Virus record (IMG/VR): IMGVR_UViG_3300047994_000374
Coordinates: 186,001-250,000 of that record
Reading direction: 5' to 3' (one strand)
Length of the DNA: 64,000 nt
Position 1 is the first letter of the stretch. Each line of letters starts with the position of its first letter. Shown one piece after another: positions 43,646 through 64,000 of this stretch. A program made the position numbers and the translations under genes. The notes below the pieces were generated by a model that worked only from the letters and a program-made list of their open reading frames with translations, made no database searches and had not been told where the DNA came from.

Positions 43646-44449
43646 CTATCCTATTTTTTCAATCGTTTCCATAATTTTTTCACTTAGCGATAAATCAAAT
43701 AATAATTTTTCGCCACCAATTACATTTACAAAATGTTCCACTACACAATTTAATGGCTTTTTATCAGATATTTGAATCGGCTCTCCATTTACAGTTAATT
43801 TATTTTCAACCAAATCATCATAAATGAAACACTTCCCATCAAGATCATTTACCTCAAAATACCTTCTTTTTTTTCCAGAATTACCAATCAACATATGATG
43901 ACGAACTTTATTACTATATTCTATATTAATACAATGTTGTTTTCCCGGATAATCATCAATTGTGAAGCCCCTTAATACATTTTTTACATCACCCATTAAA
44001 TCTATGCCCATTGACAAATCATGAGGCGCATAATCTAATAAAGAAGAGTAATTGCGATAAGGTCCGTAATTATGTCCATACGAATCAATTCTTTTTACAT
44101 TAATTGGATCAACTAATGATTTTAACTTTTGGTAAGCGGGGGAAAATAAATGGATATAATTTACAAGAATTGGCGCATGTTTTTCAAATGATTTTATTCG
44201 ATTTATTTCTTGTAAAGATAGGCTGATTGGCTTTTCAATAAGAGTTGGCAAATGATTGGATAAACAGTATTCAGCAATATCTATATGTGATGATGGTGAA
44301 GTTGCAACAATTACAGCATCGCATTTTTTTATAACCTGTTGCCAATCTCTTCGATCGCCCACTTCAAATGGTATTTTTAATTTTCGAAAAACAGAGATAT
44401 AATTTTTACCCCAGGCTCCATTACCGATTAAACATATTGTGGGAAGCAT
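43646..44449 (-). CDS. Gfo/Idh/MocA-family oxidoreductase
   Basis: IGNGAWGK Rossmann motif, H..IA, LIEKPI, DYAPHDLS. Confidence 0.85.
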   Translation of the reverse strand: MLPTICLIGNGAWGKNYISVFRKLKIPFEVGDRRDWQQVIKKCDAVIVATSPSSHIDIAEYCLSNHLPTLIEKPISLSLQEINRIKSFEKHAPILVNYIHLFSPAYQKLKSLVDPINVKRIDSYGHNYGPYRNYSSLLDYAPHDLSMGIDLMGDVKNVLRGFTIDDYPGKQHCINIEYSNKVRHHMLIGNSGKKRRYFEVNDLDGKCFIYDDLVENKLTVNGEPIQISDKKPLNCVVEHFVNVIGGEKLLFDLSLSEKIMETIEKIG

Positions 44450-45496
44450 TTAATAAGTATAATTTTCTTTTGCCCAATTATAAAATCTTTTTAATCCATC
44501 TTCTAAAGAAACTTTTGGAGAGTAATCTAATTCTTTACGAGCTTTTGTAATATCTGGACATCTGCGGTTTGGTTCATCTGCTGGATAACATGCCGGATGA
44601 TTAATAATTTCTCGTTTATTTTTTTGACCCAAAACTGTTTCAAGTGTATTTGCCAATTCAATCATAGAAAGTTCAGGCGTAGGATTTCCAATATTATAGG
44701 GCTGCCCCGCTTTCCCTTTTACGAGAACTCTTAAAAACCCCTCTATTGCATCAGTGACATAACAAAAAGTTCTTGTCTGATTTCCATTACCATAAATAGA
44801 AATGCTTTCATTAGACAATATTTTAGACATGAAATTTGGAAGCACGCGATAATCTTTTTGAAGCATACCAGGTCCAAAAACATTGAATGGGCGGCACATA
44901 TTTGCAGAAACACCGTAAGTTTTATGATAAACGCTAATCATCGTTTCACCTAATCTTTTACTTTCGTCATAGCAGGCTCTTGGTCCTGTACATGAAACGA
45001 AACCTTTATAATCTTCTTTGGTGGGGACGAATTTGGGATCAGGATCGCCATAAATTTCAGATGAGCTAAAAAATAAAAGTTTTGCGTGATTTTGTTTTGC
45101 AAGTTCAAGTGCATGTTTTAATCCGAGCGTCACACATTCCATTGTTTGCAGCGGGAAACTCTGATATTGTTCGGGAGAAGCTATACCCGCAGCTGCCAAA
45201 ACAAAATCAATCTTTTGCTCTGGTTCAAATGGTTTAGTTACATCGTATTGAAGAAATGATAGATTTGCATTTGGTGGAAATTCATTTTTATTAGATGTGA
45301 TAAAATTGTCAAGAGCTACAATTTTACATGGCGTATTTAAAGCCGTTTCATTTAGCTTTATAAAGACACTTGTAAAATATTTACCTAAAAATCCAGAGGC
45401 GCCCGTAATTAAAATTGTTTTACCTTCAAAAGCAGAAGTTAAGTCTTTAATATTGCTACAAATTTCCGTTATATCCGAATCCAATAAAAATGACAT
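44450..45496 (-). CDS. UDP-glucuronate decarboxylase (UDP-xylose synthase)-like SDR
   Basis: GASGFLG, ASPEQY, SSSEIYGDP, GPRACYDESKRLGET, RPFNVFGPGM, QTRTFCYVTD, NIGNP. Confidence 0.85.
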   Translation of the reverse strand: MSFLLDSDITEICSNIKDLTSAFEGKTILITGASGFLGKYFTSVFIKLNETALNTPCKIVALDNFITSNKNEFPPNANLSFLQYDVTKPFEPEQKIDFVLAAAGIASPEQYQSFPLQTMECVTLGLKHALELAKQNHAKLLFFSSSEIYGDPDPKFVPTKEDYKGFVSCTGPRACYDESKRLGETMISVYHKTYGVSANMCRPFNVFGPGMLQKDYRVLPNFMSKILSNESISIYGNGNQTRTFCYVTDAIEGFLRVLVKGKAGQPYNIGNPTPELSMIELANTLETVLGQKNKREIINHPACYPADEPNRRCPDITKARKELDYSPKVSLEDGLKRFYNWAKENYTY

Positions 45497-45498
45497 GA

Positions 45499-46818
45499 TT
45501 ATCTTTCCTCTATAATTGGCAATGGAATAATAAATTTACCACCGAATTTTGAATGGTTTTTAATAATTGATTCAGCAAAATTCCATGCAAGTATTAATAT
45601 AACATCTGCATCTCTATTTTGTGATAGATTGAATCCATAATCATAAATTTGGTTAGTTGTCCAAATACGAATGTGTGTGCCAGGTGTTAATAAATTTTGT
45701 TTTAATGGGCTATCATCAACTATATAATCAATTAATTCATTATCAATACCCAAATAATGTAAAAGCGTAGTTGATTTCGCTGGAGCACCATAACCTACAA
45801 TTCTATTACCTTGTGCTTTAAGTTCTTTTAATCGAGCTTTTAATTCAAATTTAATATCCTTCATTTTATCTGCAAATTCTAAAAATGGTGATACAAAATT
45901 TTTTCCTATAATGTTAAAATTGTTTTTACTTCGCAGCTCGTCCGAAACTTTTAATCCCATATCACTTTCTAACTGTAATAATTTTCCGATAGCTTCTATA
46001 TTAACTGATCGTTCATTCCGATCTTGTCTATATTTATTTTCAACATAAACTCGAATAGAACCGCCGTGAGTATTTACCCTTTCAACATCAAATACTTTCA
46101 TGTGATGTTTATTAAAAAATTCTATCAGGGGCGCGAGATGATGAAAAGAAACGTGTTCATGATAAATATTGTCGAAGTATAATCCATTAATTAAATCTGG
46201 TAAATAAGAAACTTCAAATACAAATACGCCTTCTTTAAATCGAATCAAGTGACTTATATTTTTCGCCATATCATTTAATTTACTTGAATGAGCAAAAACG
46301 TTATTTGCTACAACCACTTTAGCTCCACCATATCCCTCAAATACTTGTTTTTTAGATTTCTCATTTAAAAAATCGGGAATGGTCGGAATACCACGATCTG
46401 TAGCTTGTTTTGCTATATCTTCAGCAGGATCAATGCCAACAACTTTTAAATCAGCATTTTTGAAAAATTGCAAAAGAGTTCCATCATTACTTCCAACATC
46501 AACGACTAAATCATTTCCTTTTAAATCAAGTTTGTTTATTACGGTGGTGGCATAATTTTCAAAATGTTTAACGAAAACTTGACTTGTGCCAGAGACATAT
46601 AAATAATCTTTAAACATCAACTCCGGATTAATAATAACCGATAATTGAACATGACCGCAATCTTGACACTCTAATAAATCAAGTGGATATTTTTTTTGCT
46701 CTAACGGCTCTTTTACAAATGAATTGGCTAATGGTGACTGTGTAACGTGAAGTACATGCTTTAAATTTTGTTTTTCGCATAAATTACAATGCGAAACATA
46801 TGCAAAATCTGAATTCAT
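45499..46818 (-). CDS. NDP-sugar C-methyltransferase (NovU/EryBIII/TcaB9-type)
   Basis: Zn-site CNLC..CQDCGHVQL, DVGSNDGTLL, NNVFAH, IYHEHVSF, HGGSIR, GYGAPAKS, ILAWNF. Confidence 0.9.
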   Translation of the reverse strand: MNSDFAYVSHCNLCEKQNLKHVLHVTQSPLANSFVKEPLEQKKYPLDLLECQDCGHVQLSVIINPELMFKDYLYVSGTSQVFVKHFENYATTVINKLDLKGNDLVVDVGSNDGTLLQFFKNADLKVVGIDPAEDIAKQATDRGIPTIPDFLNEKSKKQVFEGYGGAKVVVANNVFAHSSKLNDMAKNISHLIRFKEGVFVFEVSYLPDLINGLYFDNIYHEHVSFHHLAPLIEFFNKHHMKVFDVERVNTHGGSIRVYVENKYRQDRNERSVNIEAIGKLLQLESDMGLKVSDELRSKNNFNIIGKNFVSPFLEFADKMKDIKFELKARLKELKAQGNRIVGYGAPAKSTTLLHYLGIDNELIDYIVDDSPLKQNLLTPGTHIRIWTTNQIYDYGFNLSQNRDADVILILAWNFAESIIKNHSKFGGKFIIPLPIIEER

Positions 46819-47231
46819 TTTGATCTGACAACCGTTTTTTCATAATTGACGTGATTTTTTGCAATTCCATTCATTGTAATAAATGTGGTATCTTCAAGGA
46901 ATTCCATTTTGTGCCATTTTTCTGGAGGTGAAAAAAACATGTCACCTTGGTTAAAGGTATATTCTTTTAAATTAGAACCATCAATTTCAGATTCAGAATA
47001 TTTAATAGAACCAGAAACAACATAAGCTGAATGCCAATCGCCACCTGTATGATGATGTTGGGCACGAATGCTATCTTTTTTAGATGTAATGATTGTAACA
47101 GACCCTGAATTAGCCAGCCATAAATTCTGAATCACTCCACGATCATCTACGAATGGTTTGTCCAATGGAACTTTAATATCTTCTGGAAATTGACCTGCAT
47201 TAACTAAATCAGCGTATTCTTTATTGTCCAT
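46815..47231 (-). CDS. cupin-fold sugar epimerase/isomerase
   Basis: FVDDRGVI, IRAQHHH, and PPEKWHKMEFLEDT cupin motifs. Confidence 0.75.
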   Translation of the reverse strand: MDNKEYADLVNAGQFPEDIKVPLDKPFVDDRGVIQNLWLANSGSVTIITSKKDSIRAQHHHTGGDWHSAYVVSGSIKYSESEIDGSNLKEYTFNQGDMFFSPPEKWHKMEFLEDTTFITMNGIAKNHVNYEKTVVRSK

Positions 47232-48366
47232 TTTTACCTTTATAGTTTTCGATCATCTTTTCCAATGTAATGATTTGCTTATGAAAAGTAAAGTCCTGCG
47301 CAAAAGAAATTGTTTGTTTTGTGCAGTTATCCCTATATTCTTTATTTTTTAATCCTTTTACTACAAGTTCCGTAAATTCAGACATATATTTTGTGGTTGG
47401 CGTCTTCACTATATGGACTCCACTGTCTTTGTAAATTTGCCCTAAACTATCTTGCTCTGAAATTACGGTATAGCACTCTGCATACATATTTTCTAATATT
47501 GAGCTTGAAAATCCTTCGGTAAAAGTAGGTGTTGATGTCGGGTATGCTAATACTTCTGTTTTCAACATCGCTTTATACATGTCCAATTTACTTGTATTTT
47601 TATGATGATTAATATTTAAATCTTTCATTTTATTTAAGGCATATTTAATATATTCTGCCCTATTTTTAAATTCACGCATTATTAAAGAGCTATTTCTATC
47701 TACTGATTTCAAAGAACCATACCACTTGTCAAAATCGTAATAAATATTTAATGAGCTATATGGAATTTCTTTATTAATCTTTGGGAATTCTTGAAGCAAA
47801 AGATGAAGTCCTCGATCGGGTGAAGAACAATATAAAATACTTCCTGGTATTTTCTCATAATCGTAAAGTTCTTTTTTTGCCCGCTCAAATATTTCCTCAT
47901 CAATACAATTTGGCATTACTTTCCACTTGTTATGACTATGAGGTGTAAATTGTTTAATATATTCTTGATGACTTTCCGATGGGCTAATGAAAATATCTAC
48001 AAAATTTTCGAATCCGCTTTGACAATATCCAAAATCATTAAGTTGCTGAAAACAAATTTTTAATGCTTGTTTGGGTGAATAACGCATCATATCGGGTTCA
48101 TTAAAAGAAATTACGACATCGGGAGGCACTCTTCCTAAATATAAATCTTGAAGTTGATGAAGTCCAATATTTTCCCAATTTTTTAATGAGCGCTCTGAAA
48201 TATTTGTATATAATGAAACTTGATGAGCAGAATTTTTAGCAAGGTATTTTGCAACTCCAAAACATTGTCCCTCTGAACCTGTAAGACTTTGATTTGCATA
48301 TAAGTCGGTAAAATCAAATTTTTTAGAGCCAGATGAAAATGGGCCATAAATAATTTCTATTTTCAT
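47221..48366 (-). CDS. GT-B (GT4-like) glycosyltransferase
   Basis: GSE motif, YCSSPDRGLHLL, EGFSSSILE (ExF..E). Paralogous to the C-terminal domain of the adjacent 1141-aa gene. Confidence 0.8.
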   Translation of the reverse strand: MKIEIIYGPFSSGSKKFDFTDLYANQSLTGSEGQCFGVAKYLAKNSAHQVSLYTNISERSLKNWENIGLHQLQDLYLGRVPPDVVISFNEPDMMRYSPKQALKICFQQLNDFGYCQSGFENFVDIFISPSESHQEYIKQFTPHSHNKWKVMPNCIDEEIFERAKKELYDYEKIPGSILYCSSPDRGLHLLLQEFPKINKEIPYSSLNIYYDFDKWYGSLKSVDRNSSLIMREFKNRAEYIKYALNKMKDLNINHHKNTSKLDMYKAMLKTEVLAYPTSTPTFTEGFSSSILENMYAECYTVISEQDSLGQIYKDSGVHIVKTPTTKYMSEFTELVVKGLKNKEYRDNCTKQTISFAQDFTFHKQIITLEKMIENYKGKNGQ

Positions 48367-51300
48367 TCTCTATCCATAATTGGTTTATATGGTTTTAAAA
48401 AATAATTGTTTACAGATTTATTAAACATTTCATTCCACGACTTAGCAACATCATTCCAATTAAAATGTTCGCTTGCATATTTTATTAATTCTTCTCTGTC
48501 TTCACCTTTGGTATTTTTCATGGCGTGAATAATAGCTTTGGCGAAATTATTTTGATATTCTTCAGATAGCCAATCACCAGCAATCATATCTCCACGTAAC
48601 CCTACCGTTTCATTTAATGCGGCAATTGGAGATGTTACAATTTTTAATCCTGCCATCTGAGCTTCGATGGCGCCGATGCAAGATGTCTCAGTAAACCATG
48701 TAGAAAATGGCCACACTCCAGCTGATTTATAAGCCTTCGCTAATTGATGTTGATTCACTCTTCCATGATAATGAATTCCCATATGAGACATTGATTTTAT
48801 TTGATTTTCTAGATCTTCAATTAATTTTAGTTGTCCAGCATCAACGGTTGCTTTTTTCCAATAATCAAAACCATAATAAATGTGTAACTCGGCATCATTA
48901 ACGGCTTCTCTTACTTTTGGCCAAATTTTTAATAAAGATGGCAAATATCTATCTGGTGAACTGCTTATCACTGCTTTATGAGGATTTCTTTCTACATCAA
49001 CATTAAATCTTTCTAGATCAATTCCATTTTGTGTAATAATAATTTGATCTTCTTTTAAAAATTTATGATGATGCAGTATATTTTGTTTATGCCATTCAGT
49101 TAAAGCAAAAATTTTATACGCTTCATTTGCAAGTTCTTCAGTTAATCCTTTTGGAACAACATCATGAACCCATAAATATTTCGCTTTTGCTTTAATATTC
49201 AACTTGCTATTTAAAGCTTGAGCAAAACGAGATACAACTAAAATGTCACATTTAATATCGTGAAATTTAGCTGTTTTATAATATTCTACGCCCGAATAAA
49301 TTCCTTCTCCCCATTCTCCGCAAGAAGAATAAACGCGAACTTTATTTCCTAATGCTGCTAATCTTTTTGACATTTCAATTGCCGCTAATTCAGATCCACC
49401 AATACCATGAATGTCAACTGAATGAGGCGTCCAATTTTCAAGTCCGTCCCCAATAAAAAATACAATATCTTTTGATTGATCAGTAGTTGGTGGATTTGGC
49501 CAAGCTTCGACGCAAACATTACCTTGATCGGGAACGTCTGGATACCATTGAGGTACTGCTGTACAATCTTTTACCCACCAGCCTGCTTTTCTAAAATGTG
49601 CTGCCACGCTCCAAACGGAAGGCGCGACTAAGTGTCCTCTATTTTTATCAGCGAGCCAATGATTACCCTCATTTGCCCATAACCAAGGATGTGCATGTTC
49701 TGAAAACTGTCCTCTAAACCAGGCGCCATGAGGAGTGACCATCATCATTTTGCCGTCGTCTTTAACTAATTTCCGTGCGGGCGCTAATAAATCTTTTACA
49801 GGGTCGATTAAATGTTCATACACATCTCCACAAGTAATGTAATCAAATTTCTCGCCATTTAAAGTTTCAGGGGCGGCTTCGAAATAAGTCTGAATGTGTC
49901 TTGCCCCAGTATTAAATTCAATTGCTTTTTCATTTGCAATTTTAATCGAATTCGTGCAACAATCAACTCCGGTAACATTTTTCCAGCCCTTCATTCCCCA
50001 TCGATTCGTCATCTGTCCATCGATACAAGCCATATCGAGCAATTTTTTATTTTTATCTGGAATACGATCTGTGAGCCACACATATCTTGCATACGCTCCC
50101 CCCTGCAATTCCATCGTTAAGGGCGTCATATCTGTTTTTAACAAATCCCCATTATTATCAATAGTAGAGTTGCCCTTATCATAAGCCTCTTCATCGTTAA
50201 TCCAAGATGTAAATGCTCTTGTCTTCTTTAATAATGTTTCAGTTTCATTGGTATGTCTAACACGATAGGGCGCATTTTCCAATAAACTAATTGCTGATAA
50301 CACTTCATCATGCAACATATACTCTTTCCACATTGCAACCAATAATGTTTGCAACTGTGCGTCTGTCATTTTAAGTGGCAAATCATCATACACAAATGTC
50401 TCAGGAATGCCCCAAGCCTGTGAATGCGGCGTAACTTTAGCAGTTGGAAAGTCTGATGCTGTTACATTTTTTGGATAACCATTTGGACGATGATACTTTG
50501 GCCAATCATATTCAGACATAACTTCGCCTTCATTCATAGTAATAGTTGAATCAGTGTTTGTAATAAGACTAATAATTTGATTCTTTTTACTATCTGATAA
50601 TTGATTTAAGTTAATTAAATTTTCTAATCCTTCGACAACTTTAAATTTTGCTATTTCAGTTTCATAAATTCTTTTATTTAATAATAAAGCTTCGTCGTCT
50701 GGTGCAACTTTTAATGCTGTATCGACCATAGCCAAAGCTTCCGTAATATTACCGACACGATTTAATGCAAAGTTTAAATATCTATATATTTCTAAATCTC
50801 TTTCAGAATTATTAACAAAAAGAAGTGTGTTTGTCCGTGGTAAAGATAATCCAATTTTTCCATAATTAATACATTTGTTCCAATTATTATTTTCTTGCGC
50901 CCCACCTTTTTGAGCAATAAAATAATAAGCTTTGGAAAGTGAAAAGTAAGCCTCTGCCCAATTTTCTTTAATTCGAATCGCCTTAAAAGCTAATTCAATT
51001 ACTTCTTCATAATTACTTGTAAATATAGCATAATCAATTAATTTTAAAATTGCCATATACTTTTCATCATCCCAACCGCTTAATTCAAGATAACGATTTA
51101 AAAACTTTTTAGATGTTTCAAGATCTCCAACATTTCCATATTCAAGTCCTAAATAATACAAATGACGAGCATCACTTTCACCCATGTCTTCATACATTTT
51201 TTTAAGAATCCGAAGATTACGATTTTGTTCAATTGGTTTTTGAATTATATCTCGTTTGTGATCGAAAACTACATCATCCATTTGTTGAATGTAATTTCCC

Positions 51301-51788
51301 TTGCTACCATCTTTTGGAATTAATACTTCATGAACGCGATTAACCCATTTATAAACATGTTTATTATTTATTAAACGCTCTCGATAATGACGACATGTTA
51401 CATTTCCATGTTTATCTTTTGAATATAAATAAGGAAATGCAATACAAACGTCTCCTTGATGACTTTCAAATTTTTTAATAATAGCGTTTAATTTTTCAGC
51501 ATGTAAAATCTGGTCGTCTGAATCTGCCCAAAAAATCCACTTTTTTGTAGCTAAATCAAAGCTTCGTTGACGAGCTTTGGAAAAATCGGCTATTAAACCG
51601 TTTTCATCATTACATTCCGTATACACTTCAAAAATATCAGCATATTTTCGTGCAATATTTGGCGTGTCATCCGAGGATCCAGTATCTACTATAACCAATT
51701 CTTCTACATATGGGCGAATTGATTTGAGACACTCTTCTAAATATGGTTCATTTTTAACAATTATACAGCAACTTACTGGAGCTTTCAT
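48363..51788 (-). CDS. multidomain GT2 - TPR - SAM methyltransferase - GT4-like protein
   Basis: GT2 (SCCIIVKNE, IVDTGSSD, WADSDD, VHEVL). TPR-like helices (ARHLYYLGLEY.., WAEAYFSLSKAY). MTase (LLDMACIDG, VTGVD, DVYEHLIDP). GT-B (GIGGSE, SSSPDR, ETSCIGAIEAQMAG). Confidence 0.85.
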   Translation of the reverse strand: MKAPVSCCIIVKNEPYLEECLKSIRPYVEELVIVDTGSSDDTPNIARKYADIFEVYTECNDENGLIADFSKARQRSFDLATKKWIFWADSDDQILHAEKLNAIIKKFESHQGDVCIAFPYLYSKDKHGNVTCRHYRERLINNKHVYKWVNRVHEVLIPKDGSKGNYIQQMDDVVFDHKRDIIQKPIEQNRNLRILKKMYEDMGESDARHLYYLGLEYGNVGDLETSKKFLNRYLELSGWDDEKYMAILKLIDYAIFTSNYEEVIELAFKAIRIKENWAEAYFSLSKAYYFIAQKGGAQENNNWNKCINYGKIGLSLPRTNTLLFVNNSERDLEIYRYLNFALNRVGNITEALAMVDTALKVAPDDEALLLNKRIYETEIAKFKVVEGLENLINLNQLSDSKKNQIISLITNTDSTITMNEGEVMSEYDWPKYHRPNGYPKNVTASDFPTAKVTPHSQAWGIPETFVYDDLPLKMTDAQLQTLLVAMWKEYMLHDEVLSAISLLENAPYRVRHTNETETLLKKTRAFTSWINDEEAYDKGNSTIDNNGDLLKTDMTPLTMELQGGAYARYVWLTDRIPDKNKKLLDMACIDGQMTNRWGMKGWKNVTGVDCCTNSIKIANEKAIEFNTGARHIQTYFEAAPETLNGEKFDYITCGDVYEHLIDPVKDLLAPARKLVKDDGKMMMVTPHGAWFRGQFSEHAHPWLWANEGNHWLADKNRGHLVAPSVWSVAAHFRKAGWWVKDCTAVPQWYPDVPDQGNVCVEAWPNPPTTDQSKDIVFFIGDGLENWTPHSVDIHGIGGSELAAIEMSKRLAALGNKVRVYSSCGEWGEGIYSGVEYYKTAKFHDIKCDILVVSRFAQALNSKLNIKAKAKYLWVHDVVPKGLTEELANEAYKIFALTEWHKQNILHHHKFLKEDQIIITQNGIDLERFNVDVERNPHKAVISSSPDRYLPSLLKIWPKVREAVNDAELHIYYGFDYWKKATVDAGQLKLIEDLENQIKSMSHMGIHYHGRVNQHQLAKAYKSAGVWPFSTWFTETSCIGAIEAQMAGLKIVTSPIAALNETVGLRGDMIAGDWLSEEYQNNFAKAIIHAMKNTKGEDREELIKYASEHFNWNDVAKSWNEMFNKSVNNYFLKPYKPIMDRE

Positions 51789-53847: not shown

Positions 53848-54243
53848 TTAGTTCCATATCCAATTAACTAAAAATTGTCCCGTTAATCTTAATTGCGTTA
53901 CAGCTGTAATTGTAAAACCAACTCCTGGCACAATCGTATTACAATTAAAAATTACTCCAGTTGATACAAGGATATGTTCCGTAATATTATGATCTGCCGT
54001 ATGCCCATCCATCATAAAAGCCTGCACTAATGATGTCGATAAAATGCCAGTTTGACCCGTTACAATAGTTGTTACTACGTTTGTTCCTGGAGCAGATCCA
54101 AAACTTATTATGGCTGTACCTTTATTGCCAATGCCTGCCCCAGTTGCGCCTGTAGGTCCAATTGATCCTGTAACACCCTGAGGTCCAATTGCTCCAGTAA
54201 CTCCTTGTGGTCCAATATTACTTTTAGCTGATCCTTGACTCAT
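53848..54243 (-). CDS. short collagen-stalk fibre protein
   Basis: 131 aa with about 9 GXY triplets followed by a ~90-aa beta domain. Confidence 0.7.
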   Translation of the reverse strand: MSQGSAKSNIGPQGVTGAIGPQGVTGSIGPTGATGAGIGNKGTAIISFGSAPGTNVVTTIVTGQTGILSTSLVQAFMMDGHTADHNITEHILVSTGVIFNCNTIVPGVGFTITAVTQLRLTGQFLVNWIWN

Positions 54244-54244
54244 G

Positions 54245-54574: not shown

Positions 54575-56068
54575 TTATGCTCCCATTAGTAAGAAAGTTC
54601 GTTCAAAAGAATTATTACTTGTTCCACCGCCAGCTGGTCCAGTTACACCTGGTGATCCTTGAATGCCTTGTGCTCCAGTTGTTCCTCGCGGACCTGTGGC
54701 GCCAGTAACACCAGGATTCCCTTGTGGACCGGTAAAACCAGTAAATCCTGTAACTCCAGGAATACCCTGTGAACCTTGTGCTCCTTGAGGTCCTGTTGCT
54801 CCTGTAATACCCTGAATGCCTGTTGCTCCTTGAATTCCAGCTGCGCCTTGAGGTCCTGTTACGCCTTGAATTCCTTGAGCACCAGTAGGTCCTGTAACCC
54901 CAGTTACACCTTGAATACCTTGAGGTCCAGTAGGTCCAGTTAGTCCAGTTACACCTTGAATACCCTGAATACCTTGAACACCAGTCACTCCTTGAGAGCC
55001 AGTTACACCTTGAATTCCTTGAGTGCCTTGAGGTCCGGTAGCACCTGTTAATCCTTGAATGCCAGTTGCTCCTTGAGGACCAATAGATCCAGTTACACCC
55101 TGTATTCCTTGATTCCCTTGAGCACCAGTGTTTCCCTGAATTCCCTGGGATCCTTGCGGACCTGTACTACCAGTAACTCCTTGTATTCCTTGAACACCTT
55201 GTGGTCCAGTTGAACCGGTAACTCCTTGTATTCCTTGAACACCTTGTGGTCCAATAGATCCTTGAGGTCCTATTGAACCTTGAGGTCCGGTAGGTCCTGT
55301 GGCTCCAGTTATGCCTTGTATACCTTGCGCTCCCTGAACCCCAGTGGCTCCTTGTGGTCCCGTTGCTCCTGTAATACCTTGAACTCCTTGTGGTCCTACC
55401 GATCCTGTTGGACCTTGAGCGCCAGTTGCGCCAACTGGACCTATTGCACCAGTTAAGCCAGTAATTCCTGGAGATCCTTGGATGCCTTGAATTCCAGCTC
55501 CAGTGACTCCGGGCGATCCTTGAATACCTTGTGATCCCGTTGGCCCAGTAGCGCCAGTAACTCCCTGTATACCTTGAATTCCTTGAATGCCTGTAAGTCC
55601 AATAGGTCCCTGTGGGCCAGTTGCTCCTGTTAAACCTGTAACTCCAGGTGAACCTTGATTGCCTTGTGGCCCAGTTGATCCAGTTACACCCTGAATACCT
55701 TGGGGTCCTTGAATTCCAGTAGCCCCCTGAATACCTTGAATGCCGGTAGCTCCTTGTGGTCCTGTTGCACCAGTTAAGCCTTGAATGCCAGTAGCTCCAA
55801 TTGGGCCCGTATATCCTGGACCAGTTGCACCTTGAGGTCCAGTTGCTCCAGTTAAACCCGGATTTCCTTGAGGACCTTGAACTCCTTGGGCGCCTTGAGG
55901 TCCAATAACTCCCTGAAGACCTTCAATACCTTGAGGTCCTTGAGGCCCTTGAATACCTTGAGGTCCAGTAGGTCCGCCCGGTGGTCCAATAGGTCCAGTA
56001 GCTCCTTGAGGTCCCGTAAAACCAGAAGTAGAGCCTTTAATTTGATCGGAATTTACGCGAGTTACCAT
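54575..56068 (-). CDS. collagen-like fibre protein
   Basis: 497 aa; ~465 residues of continuous Gly-X-Y (Y mostly Thr/Gln) with short terminal peptides, ending [10 protein letters not shown]. Confidence 0.9.
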
Positions 56069-56153
56069 TTAAATTATTTGTATTATACAATCGCATATAA
56101 TACTCTCTATATTAATACTATGATAGTGGTAAGTTTATTTTATAAATAAAAAA

Positions 56154-57883
<1,730 letters not shown>

Positions 57884-57884
<1 letters not shown>

Positions 57885-58771
57885 TATAAATAATAAATCA
57901 GGAATAACAAACCCGACCCTCCCGTTCCACCTGCGCCACCATTACCTGAGGTGCTACTTGAATTTCCACCGCCTCCGCCGCCGCCACCTCCTGCGCCAGT
58001 ATTTGCAAATGGAGATCCGCCACCTGTTCCTGCACTTGCAGTACCTCCGTTAGATCCATTTCCACCAGTGCCGCCATTACCGCCGACTCCAAAATCAGAT
58101 GAACCGCCTCCGCCACCTCCATCGCCACCTAAACCTGTGACAGTAGTTCCAGAAGCTGCGCCTGTAGAAATGCTTGAATTCATGGCGGAAGGAAACCCAT
58201 TTTGTCCAGAAATATTTGCACTCTGTAACCAAGTGTTTCCACCATTTCCACCAGATCCTAATGTTGGCCATAAGAGAATTCCTGGAGTTCCCTGTGTTCC
58301 AACACCATTATTTGCAATAGTTCTATTTGGATAGCCGCCAATGGCAAATCCACCACCCGACGCAAATGAAAGATTATCTTGACCTGGGCCACCACCGCCA
58401 CCACCTGCACCAGGAAAGACAACAGTAAACGACCCGTTAACAAATAATGTATCTCCACCCGATCCTCCACCACCACCAGTTGAGTTATTAGCAGAAGCAC
58501 CAGCCCCAGAAGTTCCTCCAGTACCAATTGTAATAGTATAAACAAGTCCAGGAGTAACAGAAACGGGTATTAATCTAGTAATTGCCCCTCCTCCACCAGA
58601 CCCTCCCCCGGCGCGTTGAGTAGTAGAAACAGTATTAGCCCCACGTCCTCCGCCACCACCACCGCCACCACCACCACAAGCTTTAAGATAAATACTTTTA
58701 ATACCCATAGGACAAGTCCAACTGCCAGATGTAAGATATGTAATAACTACAGTCATTGTATTATCCACCAA
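57884..58771 (-). CDS. glycine-rich protein, single module
   Basis: Same module as the downstream gene ([30 protein letters not shown]...GLLFLIYYL). The start may be the second Met, 58756. Confidence 0.85.
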
Positions 58772-61700
58772 TTGGTACCATCATTGCCAAACCAAATTTC
58801 ACCAAAAGGATTCATATAATAATTCGCAGCGCCGGTTGTTCCTTCAATAAGTTCAGTATTATTAGGTTTAAAGTTCATAGTTGGTCCGGTTGGGCCAGAA
58901 ATTCCTAATGCTCCAGTTATATCTTTAAATCCTATTATTCTATAAGTTGCTACGGCGGGCATTATATATGTTGCTCCAGCCGAATGATTATGATAAATTA
59001 AATAATCACCTCCAGATGCCCCTACAGAATATGTGGCGTTATTATTAGTTCGAAAAGTAATTATTACTGGTGGAGTTAGATTTCCAGATGGCCCTGTTGG
59101 ACCGGTAACTCCTTGAATACCCTGCGCGCCAGTTGGTCCAGTAGCTCCTGTTAATCCCTGAATTCCCTGTACACCTTGAGGTCCTGTAGATCCGGTTACA
59201 CCCTGAATTCCCTGAGCACCTTGAGGTCCGGTTGACCCAGTAACTCCCTGAATACCTTGAACGCCGGTCGAGCCCTGTGGTCCTTGCGGTCCTGTTGCTC
59301 CAGTTACACCCTGAATACCTTGTGAACCTTGTGGTCCAGTTGCGCCAGTTAATCCTGTAACTCCAGGTGATCCCTGTGCACCTTGAGGTCCGATTGCGCC
59401 GGTAAGGCCAGTGACTCCAGGAATCCCTTGCGGGCCCGTGACACCTGTTGTTCCTGGAATTCCTTGAGGACCAATAGGTCCTGTTGCGCCCGTTAAACCA
59501 GTCACCCCTGGAGAACCTTGCGCACCTTGAGGACCAGTAGCTCCTGTTAAACCTGTAATTCCCTGGACACCAGTAGCACCTTGAGGTCCAGTTGCGCCTG
59601 TTAGACCTGTAACTCCTGGGCTTCCCTGAATACCTTGAGGTCCTATGCTACCTGTTAATCCTGTTACACCAGGTGAACCTTGGTTGCCTTGAGGCCCTGT
59701 AGCGCCAGTAAGTCCTGTTACACCTGGAATACCCTGCACTCCAGTTGCGCCTTGTGGACCAGTAGATCCAGTTACACCAGTTATTCCTGGAGATCCTTGA
59801 GCGCCCTGAGATCCTGTAGATCCAGTTAACCCAGTGACTCCTGGAGATCCTTGATTTCCTTGTGGCCCAGTTGATCCTGTTACACCCTGAATGCCTTGAG
59901 GTCCTGTAGCGCCTGTTAAACCAGTTATTCCGGGAGATCCTTGCGCACCCTGAGGTCCGGTTGGTCCTGTTGGGTCGGCAATAAAAATATTAGCTATACC
60001 ACCAGTAGCTGAACCAGAAACACCAGGACCTTGAAAATTAATTACTGAAAATAAACCTACAGTAGCAACGCCGTTACGAACAATAATACCTGAAAATCCA
60101 ATACCTGTAATACCTTGAGGTCCAGTAAATCCTGGAATGCCTTGAATTCCTGTTGCGCCTTGTGGGCCTGTTGCTCCGGTAACACCTGGCGAACCTTGCG
60201 GTCCCGTACTTCCTGTTAAACCGGTAATGCCTGGAGATCCTTGTACTCCTTGTGGACCTGTTGATCCTGTTAGTCCTGTAATACCCGGTGTCCCCTGTAA
60301 ACCCTGTGGTCCTGTAGCTCCAGTAATACCTGGGCTTCCCTGATTACCTTGTGGTCCTTGTGCGCCAGTTAAACCTGTTACACCAGGTGAACCTTGATTT
60401 CCTTGAGGTCCTGTAGCTCCAGTTAGGCCTGTAACTCCCGGAGATCCTTGTATACCCTGAATGCCTGTTGCTCCTTGTGGTCCTGTTGCACCAGTAAGTC
60501 CCGTAATACCAGGCGATCCTTGTACGCCTTGTGGTCCAGTCGAGCCCGTAAGACCTGTAACTCCTGGATTTCCTTGAGGACCTGTAGCACCTTGTGGACC
60601 TGTTGATCCTGTAACTCCTGGACTTCCCTGATTTCCCTGTGGGCCAGTAGCACCGGTCAAACCTGTAGTTCCTGGGATACCCTGAATTCCTTGGGGACCA
60701 GTAGGTCCGGTGACCCCTGTTAAGCCGGTAACTCCGGGTGATCCTTGTTGACCCTGAGGTCCAGTGACGCCCGTAAGTCCTGTAACTCCTGGAATGCCCT
60801 GCGCTCCAGTAGCACCTTGAGGTCCCGTAAATCCGGTTAACCCGGGAGCGCCCTGAGGTCCCGTGGCACCTGTTAATCCAGTTATACCCGGTGATCCTTG
60901 GAGACCCTGAATTCCTTGTGGCCCTGTTGGACCTGTAGCTCCAGTTAAACCTGTAACTCCTGGAGATCCCTGTACGCCTTGCGGTCCAATTGGACCAGTA
61001 GCTCCGGTTAAACCCGTAACACCTGGAGAACCTTGAATGCCTTGAGGACCAACTGGTCCAGTAGCGCCTGTTAGTCCAGTGACACCTGGATTTCCTTGAC
61101 TTCCCTGTGGTCCCGTAGCTCCAGTTAAGCCTGGATTACCTTGCGGTCCTGTTGAGCCTGTTGCGCCTTGAGGTCCAGTCGCTCCCGTTAAACCGGTGAT
61201 TCCCTGAATTCCTTGAACGCCTGTTGCTCCTTGCGGTCCAATTGCGCCAGTTAATCCAGTTACACCTGGACTTCCTTGCAAACCTTGTGCACCGCCAGGT
61301 CCTGTAGCGCCAGTTAACCCAGTAACTCCAGGTGAGCCTTGAGCGCCTTGCAGACCCGTTGCTCCTTGAATTCCTTGAGAACCTGTTGAGCCTGTAACTC
61401 CTGGCGAACCTTGATTGCCCTGAGGTCCTGTTGCTCCCGTTAAACCAGTAATACCTGGTGAACCTTGTGAACCTTGTGTGCCTTGGGGACCGGCACTTCC
61501 TGTAACACCTGGACTTCCCTGACTACCTTGAGGTCCAATAGGTCCCGTGCTGCCAGTTAATCCCGTTACACCTGGTGACCCTTGAGAACCTTGAGTCCCA
61601 GTTGCGCCAGTAACTCCTTGTAAACCTGTAGTTCCTTGGGGTCCAGTACTTCCTGTAACACCAGGAATACCTTGAACACCAGTAGACCCCTGCAAACCCG

Positions 61701-63999
61701 TCGCTCCTGTTAGTCCTGGCGATCCTTGAACGCCTTGAGGTCCAGTCGAGCCTGTAACTCCTGGAATGCCCTGAGAACCTTGGGGACCAGTAGCTCCTGT
61801 TAAGCCTGTAAATCCTGGAGAACCTTGAATTCCTTGAGAACCGGTTGATCCAGTAACACCTTGAATTCCTGTAGCTCCCTGGGGACCTGTAAAGCCAGTC
61901 ACTCCAGTAATACCAGGAGAACCTTGAGGTCCTTGCGCTCCACCTGGACCTGTAGCACCAGTTAACCCAGTTACACCAGGTGAGCCTTGTACACCGCCCG
62001 GACCTGTAGCGCCCGTTAATCCTTGAATGCCAGTTGCTCCTTGAGGTCCAGTTGCACCAGTTAAGCCCGTAATACCTGGAGATCCCTGCGATCCTTGAGG
62101 TCCTGTTAAACCTATTACGCCTTGACTACCTGTCGCTCCCTGTGGACCAGTACTTCCAGTTACACCTGGACTTCCTTGATTACCCTGCAATCCAGCTGCG
62201 CCAGTAATACCCGGCGAGCCTTGTAAACCTTGTGCGCCGATGGGTCCCATTGCTCCAGTGACGCCAGTAACACCTTGAACTCCAGTCGCTCCTTGAATTC
62301 CTGTAACACCTTGGAGTCCAGTTACACCTGGCGAACCTTGTGGTCCATTAGATCCCGTAACTCCAGGTGAGCCTTGAGGTCCAGTAGATCCGATTAAACC
62401 AGTTACACCTGGAGATCCCTGAAGTCCTTGTGCTCCACCTGGACCAGTAGCTCCAGTTACTCCCTGTACACCTTGTGATCCTTGCGGTCCTGTAGCTCCT
62501 GTTAAACCAGTAATACCTGGGCTTCCCTGTAATCCTTGAGGTCCTGTAGATCCTTGTGAACCAGTACTACCAGTTACACCAGGTGAACCTTGAGGTCCTT
62601 GTGCTCCTGTAGAGCCAGTTATACCTTGACTGCCAGTTGAACCTGTAACGCCTTGAAGTCCAGTAACTCCCTGTGGACCAGTTGCTCCTTGAGGTCCGGT
62701 CGCTCCAGTTATACCCTGCAATCCTTGTGGACCAGTAGGTCCTGTAACACCCGTAATACCCTGCGGTCCAATTGAACCAGTTGCACCTTGAATTCCTGCG
62801 CTTCCTGTTGGTCCCTGTAAACCTGTTGCGCCTTGAGATCCTGTTGAACCTTGTGGTCCAGTTGATCCTGTTACACCTGGTGATCCTTGAAGCCCTTGTG
62901 CACCTGCAGGTCCAGTGGCACCTGTGATGCCTTGTAGTCCTGTAGCGCCTTGTGGACCAGTAACTCCTTGTTGACCTTGCGGACCAGTTGATCCAGTTAC
63001 GCCTTGAATTCCAGCAGCACCTTGTTGACCTTGAGATCCTATAGATCCTGTAGCTCCCTGAAGTCCTGTAACTCCTTGAGGTCCAATAGACCCGGTTGAT
63101 CCTTGTGAACCGGTTGCTCCCTGAATTCCAGTAGCTCCTTGAATGCCTGTAGCTCCTTGAGGTCCAGTTGCGCCCTGAATGCCTTGTGGACCAGTTGAAC
63201 CGGTAACTCCTTGAACTCCCGTTGCTCCTTGTAATCCCTGAGGTCCTGTTGGTCCAGTAGTTCCTTGCGCTCCAACAGGCCCTGTAGAACCCGTTACACC
63301 TTGAATACCTTGAACTCCGGTCGCACCTTGTGATCCTGTGCTGCCAACACTTCCTGTCGAACCAATAGCTCCAGTTGAACCTTGTAATCCAGTAGATCCT
63401 TGTGATCCAGTAGCGCCTTGAGGTCCTGTAGGTCCTGTAGCTCCGATTAATCCCGTAGCTCCTTGTGCGCCTGTTGGTCCAGTAACTCCCTGAATACCTT
63501 GAGAACCTGTAGGTCCTGTAGCTCCAGTAGCGCCTTGTATACCTTGTGGACCAGTAGCACCAATGCTACCTGTAACACCAGTAACTCCTTGAATACCCTG
63601 TGGACCAATTGATCCTGTTGGTCCTTGGGCACCAGTATTTCCTTGAGCGCCAGTAGGTCCTTGAGATCCTGTTGGTCCCGTTGAACCTGTTGCGCCTTGT
63701 ATTCCTTGTGGTCCAGTAGATCCTTGAATACCTTGAGCACCAGTTAAGCCTTGTGATCCTGTTGGACCAATAGCTCCTGTTGGACCAGGTGCACCTGCAG
63801 GTCCCGTTGCGCCTTGCGTTCCTGCAGGACCAGTTGGACCTGTAGCACCAGTAGCTCCTTGCAACCCAAATCCCGCTGGACCTGTAGCTCCAGTTACACC
63901 AGGTAAACCTTGTGCGCCAGTTGGTCCTGGAAGACCTGTAGCTCCTTGTTGACCAGTAGCACCAAATCCTGCTGGTCCAGTTGGTCCTGTAGGTCCTGG
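58753..63999 (-). CDS. giant collagen-like fibre protein (5'-truncated by window; at least 1748 aa)
   Basis: The frame is open beyond the track's TTG at 63864 to the window edge ([16 protein letters not shown]...). About 1600 GXY residues, one non-collagen insert, and a C-terminal domain ending [11 protein letters not shown]. Confidence 0.9.
59083..63999 (-). repeat. Gly-X-Y codon repeat with higher-order 15-18 aa units
   Basis: Recurrent unit such as [15 protein letters not shown], with heavy synonymous variation at the DNA level. Confidence 0.9.
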
Positions 64000-64000
64000 T

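What the first reader, a model, noticed from the sequence alone, without database searches (positions are those of the whole stretch)
43646..47231. Unusual sugar pathway: UDP-xylose-synthase-like decarboxylase paired with a C-methyltransferase, cupin and reductase
Seen: a clear UXS-type signature (GPRACYDESKR) beside a NovU/EryBIII-type C-methyltransferase, a cupin and a Gfo/Idh/MocA enzyme. No 4,6-dehydratase gene is visible in the window. Established: these C-methyltransferases act on NDP-4-keto sugars, usually 6-deoxyhexoses, and UXS/ArnA-type enzymes pass through a UDP-4-keto-pentose. Inference: the 4-keto-pentose could be C-methylated, epimerised and reduced to a branched methyl-pentose, a rare sugar for a virion glycan.
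Basis: partly seen in the sequence, partly recalled or inferred. Interest (0 to 1): 0.65.

Follow-up and report, generated by a model that had tools for sequence, protein, structure and literature searches.

The report
Phage cassette for a methyl-branched pentose
A 394-kb jumbo phage carries a four-gene cassette, also found unstudied in bacteria of many phyla, that most likely turns UDP-glucuronic acid into a methyl-branched five-carbon sugar, which neighbouring phage glycosyltransferases probably attach to collagen-like tail fibres.

Summary
Window 43646-47231 (minus strand) holds four abutting genes: cupin, sugar C-methyltransferase, UXS-like SDR and Gfo/Idh/MocA oxidoreductase. The motif GPRACYDESKR lies at 44954-44986. 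The window is part of a 394-kb tailed jumbo phage, not a giant virus.

The four genes are a conserved cassette. The same order occurs in 51 of 80 bacterial or archaeal loci from many phyla, and in at least 9 otherwise unrelated large phage contigs. C-MT and SDR stay adjacent in about 74 of 80 loci, whereas cupin or Gfo is often missing.

The SDR belongs to a clade sister to canonical UDP-xylose synthase and keeps the decarboxylase residues. Some related phage modules also carry a canonical UXS and a UDP-glucose 6-dehydrogenase, which points to UDP-GlcA as the feedstock. The cupin folds like the C3-epimerase domain of CapF. The Gfo enzyme is closest to a UDP-sugar 3-dehydrogenase.

In phages the cassette travels with a GT2-TPR-methyltransferase-GT4 protein and a GT-B enzyme. 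It often lies beside giant Thr-rich collagen-like genes.

The product, the methylated carbon and the acceptor are inferred, not shown. I found no published characterisation.

The parts
43646..44449 (-). Gfo/Idh/MocA oxidoreductase, 267 aa (P0004). It has GNGAWG at residues 9-14, EKP at 72-74 and D139xxxH143. It is the last gene of the cassette.
   Evidence: PF01408 scores 41 bits. The AF2 model has pLDDT 95.9. The best fold match is 3c1a, an uncharacterised Magnetospirillum oxidoreductase (TMq 0.87), followed by the UDP-GlcNAc 3-dehydrogenase GnnA (TMq 0.80). G9, G11, W13, E72, K73, P74 and H143 are invariant across 26 cassette homologs.
44450..45496 (-). UXS-like extended SDR, 348 aa (P0001), a predicted UDP-glucuronate 4-oxidase/decarboxylase. 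It has GASGFLG at 32-38, SSSE at 144-147, Y176/K180, N205 and R242.
   Evidence: Human UXS1 matches at E 1.5e-59 (205 bits), well ahead of every epimerase or dehydratase. A family of about 350-aa bacterial proteins is 50-60% identical. The clade is sister to canonical UXS, with support 96*/98*.
44954..44986 (-). Codons of the motif GPRACYDESKR, which carries the catalytic Tyr176 and Lys180.
45499..46818 (-). NDP-sugar C-methyltransferase, 439 aa (P0002). It has a Zn ribbon (C11, C14, C51, C54), a SAM motif VDVGSNDG at 106-113 and YHEH at 219-222.
   Evidence: PF08421 scores 54.9 bits and PF08484 scores 135 bits. The MtmC 3-C-methyltransferase 4rv9 matches at E 1.5e-69; KijD1 and TcaB9 match at about 1e-47.
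46815..47231 (-). Small cupin, 138 aa (P0003), a predicted metal-dependent epimerase acting on the keto-sugar.
   Evidence: H59, H61, D65, H67 and H107 are invariant in 25 cassette cupins. The AF2 model has pLDDT 92.6. The top five Foldseek hits are all the cupin domain of S. aureus CapF (E 1.7e-9, TMq 0.71-0.75).
47221..48366 (-). GT-B (GT1-like) glycosyltransferase, 381 aa. It is the phage-specific partner of the cassette.
   Evidence: The PF00534 match is weak (23.9 bits). Homologs lie directly upstream of the cupin in phage loci L086, L088-L090, L092 and L093. There are none in the bacterial loci.
48363..51788 (-). Multidomain protein of 1141 aa. Its domains are GT2 (6-143), TPR (about 190-380), a SAM methyltransferase (577-737) and GT4/GT1 (870-1125).
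   Evidence: Residues 5-232 match the SunS-family peptide S-glycosyltransferase model at E 3.5e-12. Full-length homologs at 42-45% identity precede the cassette in L089 and L092, and partial homologs do so in L086, L088, L090 and L093.
54575..56068 (-). Collagen-like fibre protein, 497 aa, made of G-X-Y repeats with Thr at about 40% of Y positions. It is a candidate acceptor.
   Evidence: Many PHROG tail-fibre families match, with E values down to 1e-134. The sequence is and the triplet statistics.
58753..64000 (-). Giant collagen-like protein, 1946 aa in the genome, which runs past the end of the window. Thr occupies about 46% of Y positions. It is a candidate acceptor.
   Evidence: PF01391 Collagen matches at E 1.7e-232. 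All 741 GXY triplets of the genome lie in these two genes.

Best explanation
The four genes form one conserved biosynthetic cassette for a UDP-linked, C-methyl-branched pentose.

Proposed steps:
1. The UXS-like SDR oxidises UDP-glucuronic acid at C4 and decarboxylates it to UDP-4-keto-xylose. The phage has no UDP-glucose dehydrogenase, so the host must supply UDP-GlcA.
2. The TcaB9/MtmC-type C-methyltransferase uses SAM to methylate a carbon next to the keto group. By similarity this is most likely C3.
3. The CapF-like metal cupin epimerises an alpha carbon. This either supplies the epimer that the methyltransferase accepts or sets the final configuration.
4. The Gfo/Idh/MocA enzyme reduces the remaining keto group with NAD(P)H.

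The two phage-specific glycosyltransferase genes directly upstream (GT-B, and GT2-TPR-MT-GT4) then use the product. The most likely target is threonine in the G-X-T repeats of the adjacent collagen-like tail fibres.

Shown here: gene identities, catalytic motifs, folds, clade placement and conserved synteny. Inferred: substrate, order of steps, methylated carbon, stereochemistry and acceptor.
For: - Motifs and best matches: the SDR hits hUXS1 at E 1.5e-59, and it keeps the S-S-E, Y/K, N205 and R242 residues, which are invariant in its family.
- The NCBIfam 'dehydratase' top hit says nothing, because a canonical UXS gives the same pattern.
- Tree: the cassette SDRs form a starred clade sister to canonical UXS.
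- Synteny: cupin>C-MT>SDR>Gfo occurs in 51 of 80 genome loci from many phyla. C-MT and SDR stay adjacent in about 74 of 80, and most exceptions are cut by a contig end. Forms without cupin and forms without Gfo both exist.
- Feedstock: a UDP-glucose 6-dehydrogenase (TIGR03026 403 bits; TuaD 377 bits) directly follows the Gfo gene in phage G002/L088. A weaker family member (143 bits, below the cut-off) lies in the L120 module, and other UGDH-like genes lie next to the cassette in L017, L057 and L091. A canonical UXS (370 bits to hUXS1) sits in the L087 and L088 modules beside the divergent SDR.
- Precedent: UXS-family enzymes such as ArnA, CalS9, AtmS9, RsU4kpxs and EvdS6 release UDP-4-keto-xylose for downstream tailoring, including a branched pentose (PMC10338323).
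- Cupin: its fold matches the CapF epimerase domain.
- Acceptor: BIG GT + GT-B + cassette move together among unrelated phages. The GT2-TPR part resembles the SunS peptide glycosyltransferases. Collagen-like genes abut the module here and in G001 and G002, lie inside it in L091, and lie within 6-17 kb in G003 and G004.
Against: - No enzyme of this cassette has been assayed.
- Whether a UXS-type enzyme releases the keto sugar or finishes to UDP-xylose cannot be read from sequence or structure (PMC10338323).
- The only consistent active-site difference from canonical UXS is Thr to Ser at position 145. That is a weak hint at most.
- The closest characterised fold of the Gfo enzyme is a C3 dehydrogenase, not a 4-ketoreductase.
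- A C3 epimerase is redundant after C3 methylation, so the order of steps or the methylated carbon may differ from the proposal.
- All solved C-MT relatives use dTDP-6-deoxyhexoses.
- Five of ten phage loci have no collagen-like gene within 8 kb, and one phage contig (G005) has none at all.
- The own genome has no UGDH.
Confidence: 0.5

Rival explanations
1. Same feedstock, different route. The SDR is a complete UXS that makes UDP-xylose. The GnnA-like Gfo enzyme re-oxidises it at C3. The C-MT methylates C2 or C4 next to that 3-keto group. The cupin epimerises or isomerises, and the Gfo enzyme reduces C3 again. The product is still a methyl-branched pentose, branched at C2 or C4.
For: The nearest characterised fold of the Gfo enzyme is UDP-GlcNAc 3-dehydrogenase, and NCBIfam's best hit is the archaeal UDP-GlcNAc 3-dehydrogenase. 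From general knowledge, Gfo-family enzymes in sugar pathways mostly act at C3. The SDR keeps all residues needed for the reductive half-reaction.
Against: Cassettes without any Gfo gene (cupin-C-MT-SDR-GT2 in L028, L039, L057, L061 and L079) still keep C-MT and SDR together, so the SDR itself must be able to give the C-MT its keto substrate. L087 and L088 carry a separate canonical UXS beside the cassette SDR, which would be redundant if both make UDP-xylose.
Confidence: 0.15
2. The C-MT methylates C5 of the 4-keto-pentose, as NovU does. The product is then a 6-deoxyhexose (or a 5,5-dimethyl sugar) made by decarboxylation followed by re-methylation, not a sugar with a quaternary branch at C3. 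The cupin would act as a genuine C3 epimerase, as NovW does in noviose synthesis.
For: The gene set (4-keto generator, cupin 3-epimerase, C-MT, reductase) mirrors the noviose pathway NovT/NovW/NovU/NovS (general knowledge). A C3 epimerase makes more chemical sense if C3 is not the methylated carbon. The cupin's best fold match is a C3 epimerase.
Against: All solved relatives of the C-MT are 3-C-methyltransferases, with MtmC the closest at E 1.5e-69. A 4,6-dehydratase makes 6-deoxyhexoses in one step, so this route would be roundabout. No 5-C-methyltransferase sequence was available for comparison.
Confidence: 0.1
3. The SDR is not a decarboxylase. It oxidises or dehydrates a UDP-hexose, or an N-acetylated uronic acid, and the cassette makes a classical C-methyl-6-deoxyhexose or a C-methyl-XylNAc.
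For: NCBIfam's top hit is dTDP-glucose 4,6-dehydratase (114 bits, far below the cut-off). Characterised C-MTs use 6-deoxyhexoses. No equivalog model is met.
Against: The dehydratase acid/base pair (T-D-E) is S-S-E here. A canonical UXS control gives the same NCBIfam pattern. The SDR clade is sister to UXS and far from the RmlB-like rows. UGDH of the UDP-glucose type, not the UDP-ManNAc type, lies next to the cassette. hUXS1 scores 205 bits, against 82 bits or less for the dehydratases.
Confidence: 0.08
4. The sugar pathway is as proposed, but the glycan does not go onto collagen-like fibres. Instead it decorates another virion protein or the host envelope, for example as surface conversion against superinfection.
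For: In bacteria the cassette sits in envelope-glycan loci with a small GT2, WecA-like, Wzy and ArnT-like (PMT_2) genes. Five of ten phage loci have no collagen-like gene within 8 kb.
Against: The phage glycosyltransferases have essentially no homologs in the bacterial loci. The phage lacks the lipid-carrier GT2/ArnT-like set. The GT2-TPR part resembles peptide glycosyltransferases. The module abuts or contains collagen-like genes in four independent phages and lies in the structural gene block.
Confidence: 0.25

Closest known systems
UDP-xylose synthase / UDP-glucuronate decarboxylases that release UDP-4-keto-xylose (hUXS1, ArnA, RsU4kpxs, CalS9, AtmS9, EvdS6)
   Same: It is an extended SDR with a GxxGxxG motif, S/T-S-E, YxxxK, Asn and Arg in the same places. 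hUXS1 is the best solved match. In the known pathways the 4-keto-pentose is handed to tailoring enzymes (PMC10338323).
   Different: It forms a separate clade at about 37-43% identity to canonical UXS. It has a 25-residue N-terminal extension, family-wide Ser145 in place of Thr, and Tyr216 in place of Gly. Its partner is a C-methyltransferase, not an aminotransferase (Arn, calicheamicin) and not an acetyl-branching enzyme (eurekanate).
NDP-4-keto-6-deoxyhexose C-methylation pathways (TcaB9, MtmC, KijD1, TylC3/EryBIII; NovT-W-U-S for noviose; the Bacillus cereus CDP-cereose/cillose operon)
   Same: The logic is the same: make a 4-keto sugar, C-methylate with SAM, epimerise, reduce. The C-MT architecture is the same: Zn ribbon, SAM domain and C-terminal domain.
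   Different: The keto sugar comes from a decarboxylase rather than a 4,6-dehydratase. The substrate would therefore be a UDP-pentose rather than a dTDP/CDP/GDP-6-deoxyhexose. The epimerase is a small metal cupin rather than RmlC-like, and the reductase is Gfo/Idh/MocA rather than an SDR.
CapF (Cap5F) of Staphylococcus aureus, cupin domain
   Same: It is the best fold match (TMq 0.71-0.75). The His/Asp cluster lies at the cupin metal site. Both act in a UDP-4-keto-sugar pathway.
   Different: Here it is a free-standing 138-aa protein, not fused to an SDR reductase. Identity is only 20-23%, and it matches no shared Pfam family above threshold.
Collagen-like glycoproteins decorated with rare sugars (Bacillus BclA with anthrose)
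   Same: Thr-rich G-X-Y repeats lie next to genes for a rare sugar and glycosyltransferases. BclA is a collagen-like glycoprotein capped with a unique sugar (PMC10050317, PMC7793302).
   Different: This is a phage tail-fibre setting with a different sugar pathway. Glycosylation has not been shown here.

Membership tests
UDP-glucuronate decarboxylase (UXS/ArnA type) | Extended-SDR fold with an N-terminal GxxGxxG NAD site | tested here: met
   GASGFLG lies at residues 32-38. PF01370 scores 152 bits and PF16363 scores 118 bits.
UDP-glucuronate decarboxylase (UXS/ArnA type) | Catalytic S/T...YxxxK, plus the Glu after S/T-S, the Asn and the conserved Arg (hUXS1 T118/E120/Y147/K151/N176/R277) | tested here: met
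   S145, E147, Y176, K180, N205 and R242 align with the hUXS1 motifs STSE, YDEGK, FNTFGP and QTR. They are invariant in the family. The Thr is a Ser in at least 90% of cassette SDRs.
UDP-glucuronate decarboxylase (UXS/ArnA type) | Closest relatives are bona fide UXS rather than dehydratases or epimerases | tested here: met
   hUXS1 scores 205 bits, against 122 bits or less for any other solved SDR. The clade is sister to canonical UXS with starred support. It is nevertheless a separate clade: a canonical phage UXS scores 370 bits to hUXS1.
UDP-glucuronate decarboxylase (UXS/ArnA type) | Curated equivalog model met | tested here: not met
   The best relevant model, PRK11908 (UDP-4-keto-pentose/UDP-xylose synthase), scores 107 bits against a cut-off of 294. 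A canonical UXS also fails it at 105 bits, so this library has no model that could decide.
UDP-glucuronate decarboxylase (UXS/ArnA type) | Converts UDP-GlcA to UDP-4-keto-xylose or UDP-xylose with loss of CO2 | not testable with these tools
   This needs an enzyme assay. Indirect support comes from UGDH genes next to the cassette in L088, L120, L017, L057 and L091.
NDP-sugar C-methyltransferase (TcaB9/MtmC/NovU family) | Three-part architecture: Zn-ribbon (PF08421), class I SAM domain and C-terminal domain (PF08484) | tested here: met
   PF08421 scores 54.9 bits (cut-off 31.3), PF08484 scores 135.3 bits (cut-off 23.5), and PF13489 and PF08242 score above their cut-offs.
NDP-sugar C-methyltransferase (TcaB9/MtmC/NovU family) | Four Zn-binding Cys and the Y-x-E-H catalytic segment | tested here: met
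   C11, C14, C51, C54 and YHEH at 219-222 align with the same residues of MtmC.
NDP-sugar C-methyltransferase (TcaB9/MtmC/NovU family) | Substrate is an NDP-4-keto sugar; position of methylation (C3 or C5) | not testable with these tools
   All solved relatives are 3-C-methyltransferases on dTDP sugars. No 5-C-methyltransferase was available to compare.
CapF-type cupin epimerase | Cupin fold with a His/Asp metal site, acting on a UDP-4-keto sugar | tested here: inconclusive
   The fold and the conserved H59/H61/D65/H107 fit. Sequence similarity is marginal: profile E 0.06 to CapF and 0.07 to the FdtA ketoisomerase. Activity is untested.
Gfo/Idh/MocA oxidoreductase | Rossmann GxGxxG, EKP motif and DxxxH in the C-terminal domain | tested here: met
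   GNGAWG at 9-14, EKP at 72-74 and D139...H143 are present. PF01408 scores above its cut-off, and the fold has TMq 0.87 to 3c1a. The phage copy is about 50 residues shorter than the bacterial ones, partly because of a gap of about 25 residues in the Rossmann domain.

The most novel reading that the evidence does not exclude
The cassette makes a nucleotide sugar that has never been described, a UDP-C-methyl-pentose. It is isobaric with deoxyhexose, so it would be easy to overlook by mass spectrometry. The cassette is spread over at least ten bacterial phyla, marine picocyanobacteria and an archaeon. Jumbo phages have captured it together with their own protein glycosyltransferases to O-glycosylate collagen-like tail fibres. 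That would make it a phage-encoded, self-sufficient virion glycosylation system using a branched sugar.
Probability: 0.4. Interest if true: 0.75.

Novelty: new variant of a known kind. Interest (0 to 1): 0.62.

Why it matters
If the prediction holds, it defines a new branch of nucleotide-sugar metabolism: C-methylation of a decarboxylase-derived 4-keto-pentose. It would assign a function to a four-gene cassette present in hundreds of genomes, and to a solved structure of unknown function (3c1a).

It would also predict a sugar with the same mass as fucose or rhamnose, which mass-spectrometry surveys would mis-assign.

For phage biology, it would be a clear case of a tailed phage bringing both the sugar pathway and the transferases to decorate its own fibres. 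That bears on host recognition and on immune or defence evasion.

All of this can be tested directly with four recombinant enzymes and commercial UDP-GlcA.

Tried and rejected
- Giant-virus origin was rejected. PHROGs tail sheath and tail-fibre hits, and the IMG/VR record, show a tailed jumbo phage. The only cultured relative is Bacillus phage G, at 29% identity over 17% of the sheath.
- The NCBIfam top hit 'dTDP-glucose 4,6-dehydratase' for the SDR carries no information. A canonical UXS control gives the same ranking.
- The cupin as an FdtA-type 3,4-ketoisomerase or an RmlC epimerase: the profile hit to FdtA is only marginal (E 0.07), and Foldseek ranks CapF first. This was not excluded, and it is kept as part of the rivals.
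- S179 in YDESKR as a family marker was rejected, because viral canonical UXS share it.
- Huge phage LR756502.1 has a cupin and a C-MT but a different SDR, so it is not the same cassette.
- The patatin gene and the 120-aa and 486-aa genes as module members were rejected. They are absent from all related loci.
- Seven literature searches for this gene combination or for a phage C-methyltransferase pathway found no characterisation.
- Not used, because not needed: read mapping, the large representative-protein search, complex prediction and alternative genetic codes.

Full report
**1. What is there**

The window is bases 186001-250000 of a 394,192-bp IMG/VR virus record, classed as linear with CheckV completeness 92%. 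Genes are tightly packed on the minus strand. They include a tail-sheath homolog (17878-20664), tail-fibre-like proteins and two collagen-like proteins. This is therefore a tailed jumbo phage, not a giant eukaryotic virus. It is remote from cultured phages: the sheath matches only Bacillus phage G, at 29% identity over 17% of its length.

The finding's coordinates hold exactly four abutting minus-strand genes:

| Gene | Coordinates | Length |
|---|---|---|
| cupin | 46815-47231 | 138 aa |
| C-methyltransferase | 45499-46818 | 439 aa |
| SDR | 44450-45496 | 348 aa |
| Gfo/Idh/MocA | 43646-44449 | 267 aa |

Two glycosyltransferase genes precede them with 4-11 nt overlaps. One is a GT-B enzyme (47221-48366). 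The other is a 1141-aa GT2-TPR-methyltransferase-GT4 protein (48363-51788). Upstream of these lie small ORFs, a 486-aa protein of a phage-only family, and collagen-like proteins of 497 aa and 1946 aa.

**2. The individual enzymes**

*SDR.* The motif GPRACYDESKR is residues 171-181.
- The best solved relative is human UDP-xylose synthase (E 1.5e-59, 205 bits). The next best SDR scores 122 bits, and dTDP-glucose dehydratases score about 82 bits or less.
- The alignment shows STSE/SSSE, ACYDEGKR/ACYDESKR, FNTFGP/FNVFGP and QTRAF/QTRTF. The decarboxylase set S/T, Glu, Tyr, Lys, Asn and Arg is therefore kept, and it is invariant across the family.
- The 4,6-dehydratase pair Asp-Glu is absent.
- NCBIfam ranks a dehydratase model first. 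A canonical UXS gives the same ranking, so that library cannot decide.

*C-MT.* It has all three domains of the TcaB9/MtmC family above their thresholds. It also has the four Zn cysteines and the YHEH segment. MtmC is the closest solved structure (E 1.5e-69).

*Cupin.* It has an invariant H-x-H...D.H...H cluster. A confident model (pLDDT 92.6) matches the cupin domain of S. aureus CapF best (E 1.7e-9, TMq 0.71-0.75). That domain is the C3-epimerase part of a UDP-4-keto-sugar enzyme.

*Gfo protein.* It keeps the GxGxxG, EKP and DxxxH motifs. Its model (pLDDT 95.9) matches first an uncharacterised Magnetospirillum oxidoreductase (3c1a) and then the UDP-GlcNAc 3-dehydrogenase GnnA.

**3. The four genes are a conserved cassette**

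Proteins 50-60% identical to the SDR are abundant in bacteria. In the 80 best genome loci, all four genes occur in the same order in 51. Most of the remaining loci are cut by contig ends. Two loci were checked independently with called genes and Pfam.

The hosts span Acidobacteriota, Myxococcota, Rhodospirillales, Magnetospirillum, Elusimicrobiota, Omnitrophota, Desulfovibrio, Nonomuraea, Prochlorococcus single cells, SAR11-like Alphaproteobacteria and a Nitrosopelagicus archaeon.

Variants exist without the Gfo gene (cupin-C-MT-SDR-GT2) and without the cupin (GT2-C-MT-SDR-Gfo). C-MT and SDR stay adjacent in about 74 of 80 loci. This is the strongest argument that the SDR supplies the keto substrate of the methyltransferase.

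Frequent bacterial neighbours are a roughly 232-aa GT2 (35 loci), WecA-like and GT1 enzymes, and an ArnT-like PMT_2 protein (10 loci). This set is reminiscent of the Ara4N route, which runs from a decarboxylase through a lipid carrier to a periplasmic transferase.

**4. Clade and feedstock**

In a FastTree of 143 SDRs, the cassette SDRs form a clade of 103 rows with starred support. This clade is sister to a starred clade of canonical UXS, and both are separated from RmlB/GalE-like rows. The window's protein falls in a starred subclade of 9 phage and 3 bacterial rows.

Compared with canonical UXS, the only consistent differences are:
- Ser145 for Thr;
- Tyr216 for Gly;
- Thr243 for Ser;
- Glu308 for Asp;
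- Leu37 for Ile and Phe41 for Leu;
- three positions (8, 49, 301) that are gaps in canonical UXS, including one in the 25-residue N-terminal extension.

The Thr at position 145 is the residue whose mutation in EvdS6 abolished the reductive half-reaction (PMC10338323). This is a lead only.

Related phage modules add further support. L087 and L088 carry a canonical UXS (370 bits to hUXS1) beside the divergent SDR. In L088 a UDP-glucose 6-dehydrogenase (TIGR03026 403 bits; TuaD 377 bits, against 130 bits for UDP-ManNAc dehydrogenase) directly follows the Gfo gene. Further UGDH-like genes lie next to the cassette in L120, L091, L017 and L057.

The window's own genome has no UGDH, so the host must supply UDP-GlcA.

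**5. The phage context**

At least nine large phage contigs (up to 427 kb) carry the cassette with homologs of the GT-B enzyme, most also with homologs of the large multidomain GT. Their flanking genes share nothing with this genome, so the module is mobile among phages. The phage GTs have essentially no homologs in the bacterial loci.

The N-terminal GT2-TPR part of the large protein matches the SunS family of peptide glycosyltransferases (E 3.5e-12). It gives faint hits to collagen prolyl-hydroxylase peptide-binding TPR domains.

All 741 G-X-Y triplets of this genome lie in the two genes next to the module, with Thr at about 45% of Y positions. Collagen-like genes also occur as follows:
- inside the module in L091;
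- abutting it in G002;
- 3.7 kb from it in G001;
- 6-17 kb away in G003 and G004;
- absent from the 81-kb contig G005.

Thr-rich collagen-like glycoproteins decorated with rare sugars are known from Bacillus exosporia (PMC10050317, PMC7793302). Glycosylation of the fibres is therefore a reasonable inference, but it is unproven.

**6. Mechanism and rivals**

The best-supported route runs as follows: UDP-GlcA is converted by the SDR to UDP-4-keto-xylose, which is C-methylated by the C-MT with SAM, epimerised by the cupin and reduced by the Gfo enzyme.

UXS-family enzymes that hand a 4-keto-pentose to tailoring enzymes are established. The pentose-derived branched sugar eurekanate is a precedent (PMC10338323).

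The uncertain points are:
- whether the SDR releases the keto sugar;
- which carbon is methylated, since C3 fits the similarity data but C5 would make better sense of a C3 epimerase;
- whether the Gfo enzyme works at C4 or C3.

The rival routes are scored in the report sections: a 3-keto route through UDP-xylose, C5 methylation, a non-decarboxylase SDR, and a different acceptor.

A C-methyl-pentose has the same formula as a deoxyhexose (residue mass 146.058 Da). Only NMR, or a methyl singlet versus doublet, will identify it.

**7. Novelty**

Seven full-text searches found no description of this gene combination or of a phage C-methyl sugar pathway. Each enzyme family is known, and so is the make-keto, methylate, epimerise, reduce logic. 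Coupling that logic to a glucuronate decarboxylase, and packaging it with protein glycosyltransferases in jumbo phages, is new. I rate it a new variant of a known kind.

Noticed in passing
G000:C1:157587-158516 (outside the window, 72 kb upstream; locus L002:1450-2379): A second SDR of 309 aa (P0124) lies next to a GT2 gene. Its best solved matches are dTDP-glucose 4,6-dehydratases (E 3.5e-29). It reads SSDQ and YKLDE where dehydratases have TDE and YxxxK, so it is probably not a working 4,6-dehydratase. Its role is unknown.
   Followed up: partly
L120:7998-11435 (phage contig IMGVR_UViG_3300032516_000001): The cassette SDR of this 242-kb phage contig is 1145 aa because it carries two inteins (LAGLIDADG and intein-splicing domains). 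One is inserted just before the catalytic CYDESKR segment and one just after the PFN motif, so they bracket the active-site piece.
   Followed up: partly
window 42777-43637 (-): A patatin-like phospholipase (PF01734, 89 bits; a weak CBASS-lipase-like hit) lies directly downstream of the Gfo gene on the same strand. It is not present next to the cassette in any related phage or bacterial locus.
   Followed up: partly
window 54000-64000: G+C jumps from about 32-39% to 48-53%. The whole rise coincides with the two collagen-like genes, whose G-X-Y codons are G+C-rich. It is not a sign of chimerism.
   Followed up: yes
window 52351-53811 (-): A 486-aa protein (P0125) lies between the collagen-like genes and the glycosyltransferases. 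It has no Pfam or PHROG hit. It belongs to a family of about 470-490-aa hypothetical proteins found almost only in tailed phages.
   Followed up: partly
Bacterial loci, e.g. L039:625-5134, L079:47-5244, L017:4577-5272: In bacteria the cassette is usually preceded or followed by a roughly 232-aa GT2 (35 loci), and in 10 loci by a PMT_2/ArnT-like membrane transferase. This suggests transfer through a lipid carrier to an envelope target, parallel to the Ara4N system.
   Followed up: partly
PDB 3c1a (Magnetospirillum magnetotacticum MS-1): This structural-genomics 'putative oxidoreductase' is the closest solved relative of the cassette Gfo enzyme (E 4.5e-19; TMq 0.87). It comes from a genus that carries the cassette, so it may be the cassette enzyme itself, solved but never assigned a function.
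   Followed up: no
L101, L103, L104 (IMG/VR contigs): A sister group of phage SDRs (43-44% identical) is followed directly by a UGDH gene and then by a distant C-methyltransferase (24-26% identity). This looks like a second, differently arranged version of the same idea.
   Followed up: no
L086:4428-5093, L091:5377-6084; own genome G000:49333-50049: An FkbM-type methyltransferase (PF05050) sits inside the glycosylation module in two related phages. This phage has a homolog (43% identity) about 180 kb away from the module.
   Followed up: no
window 38230-39531 (-): A 433-aa protein has an endonuclease domain and a C-terminal HNH-like domain (PHROG 4645, E 6e-43). It is a possible homing endonuclease in the low-G+C stretch next to the sugar genes.
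   Followed up: no
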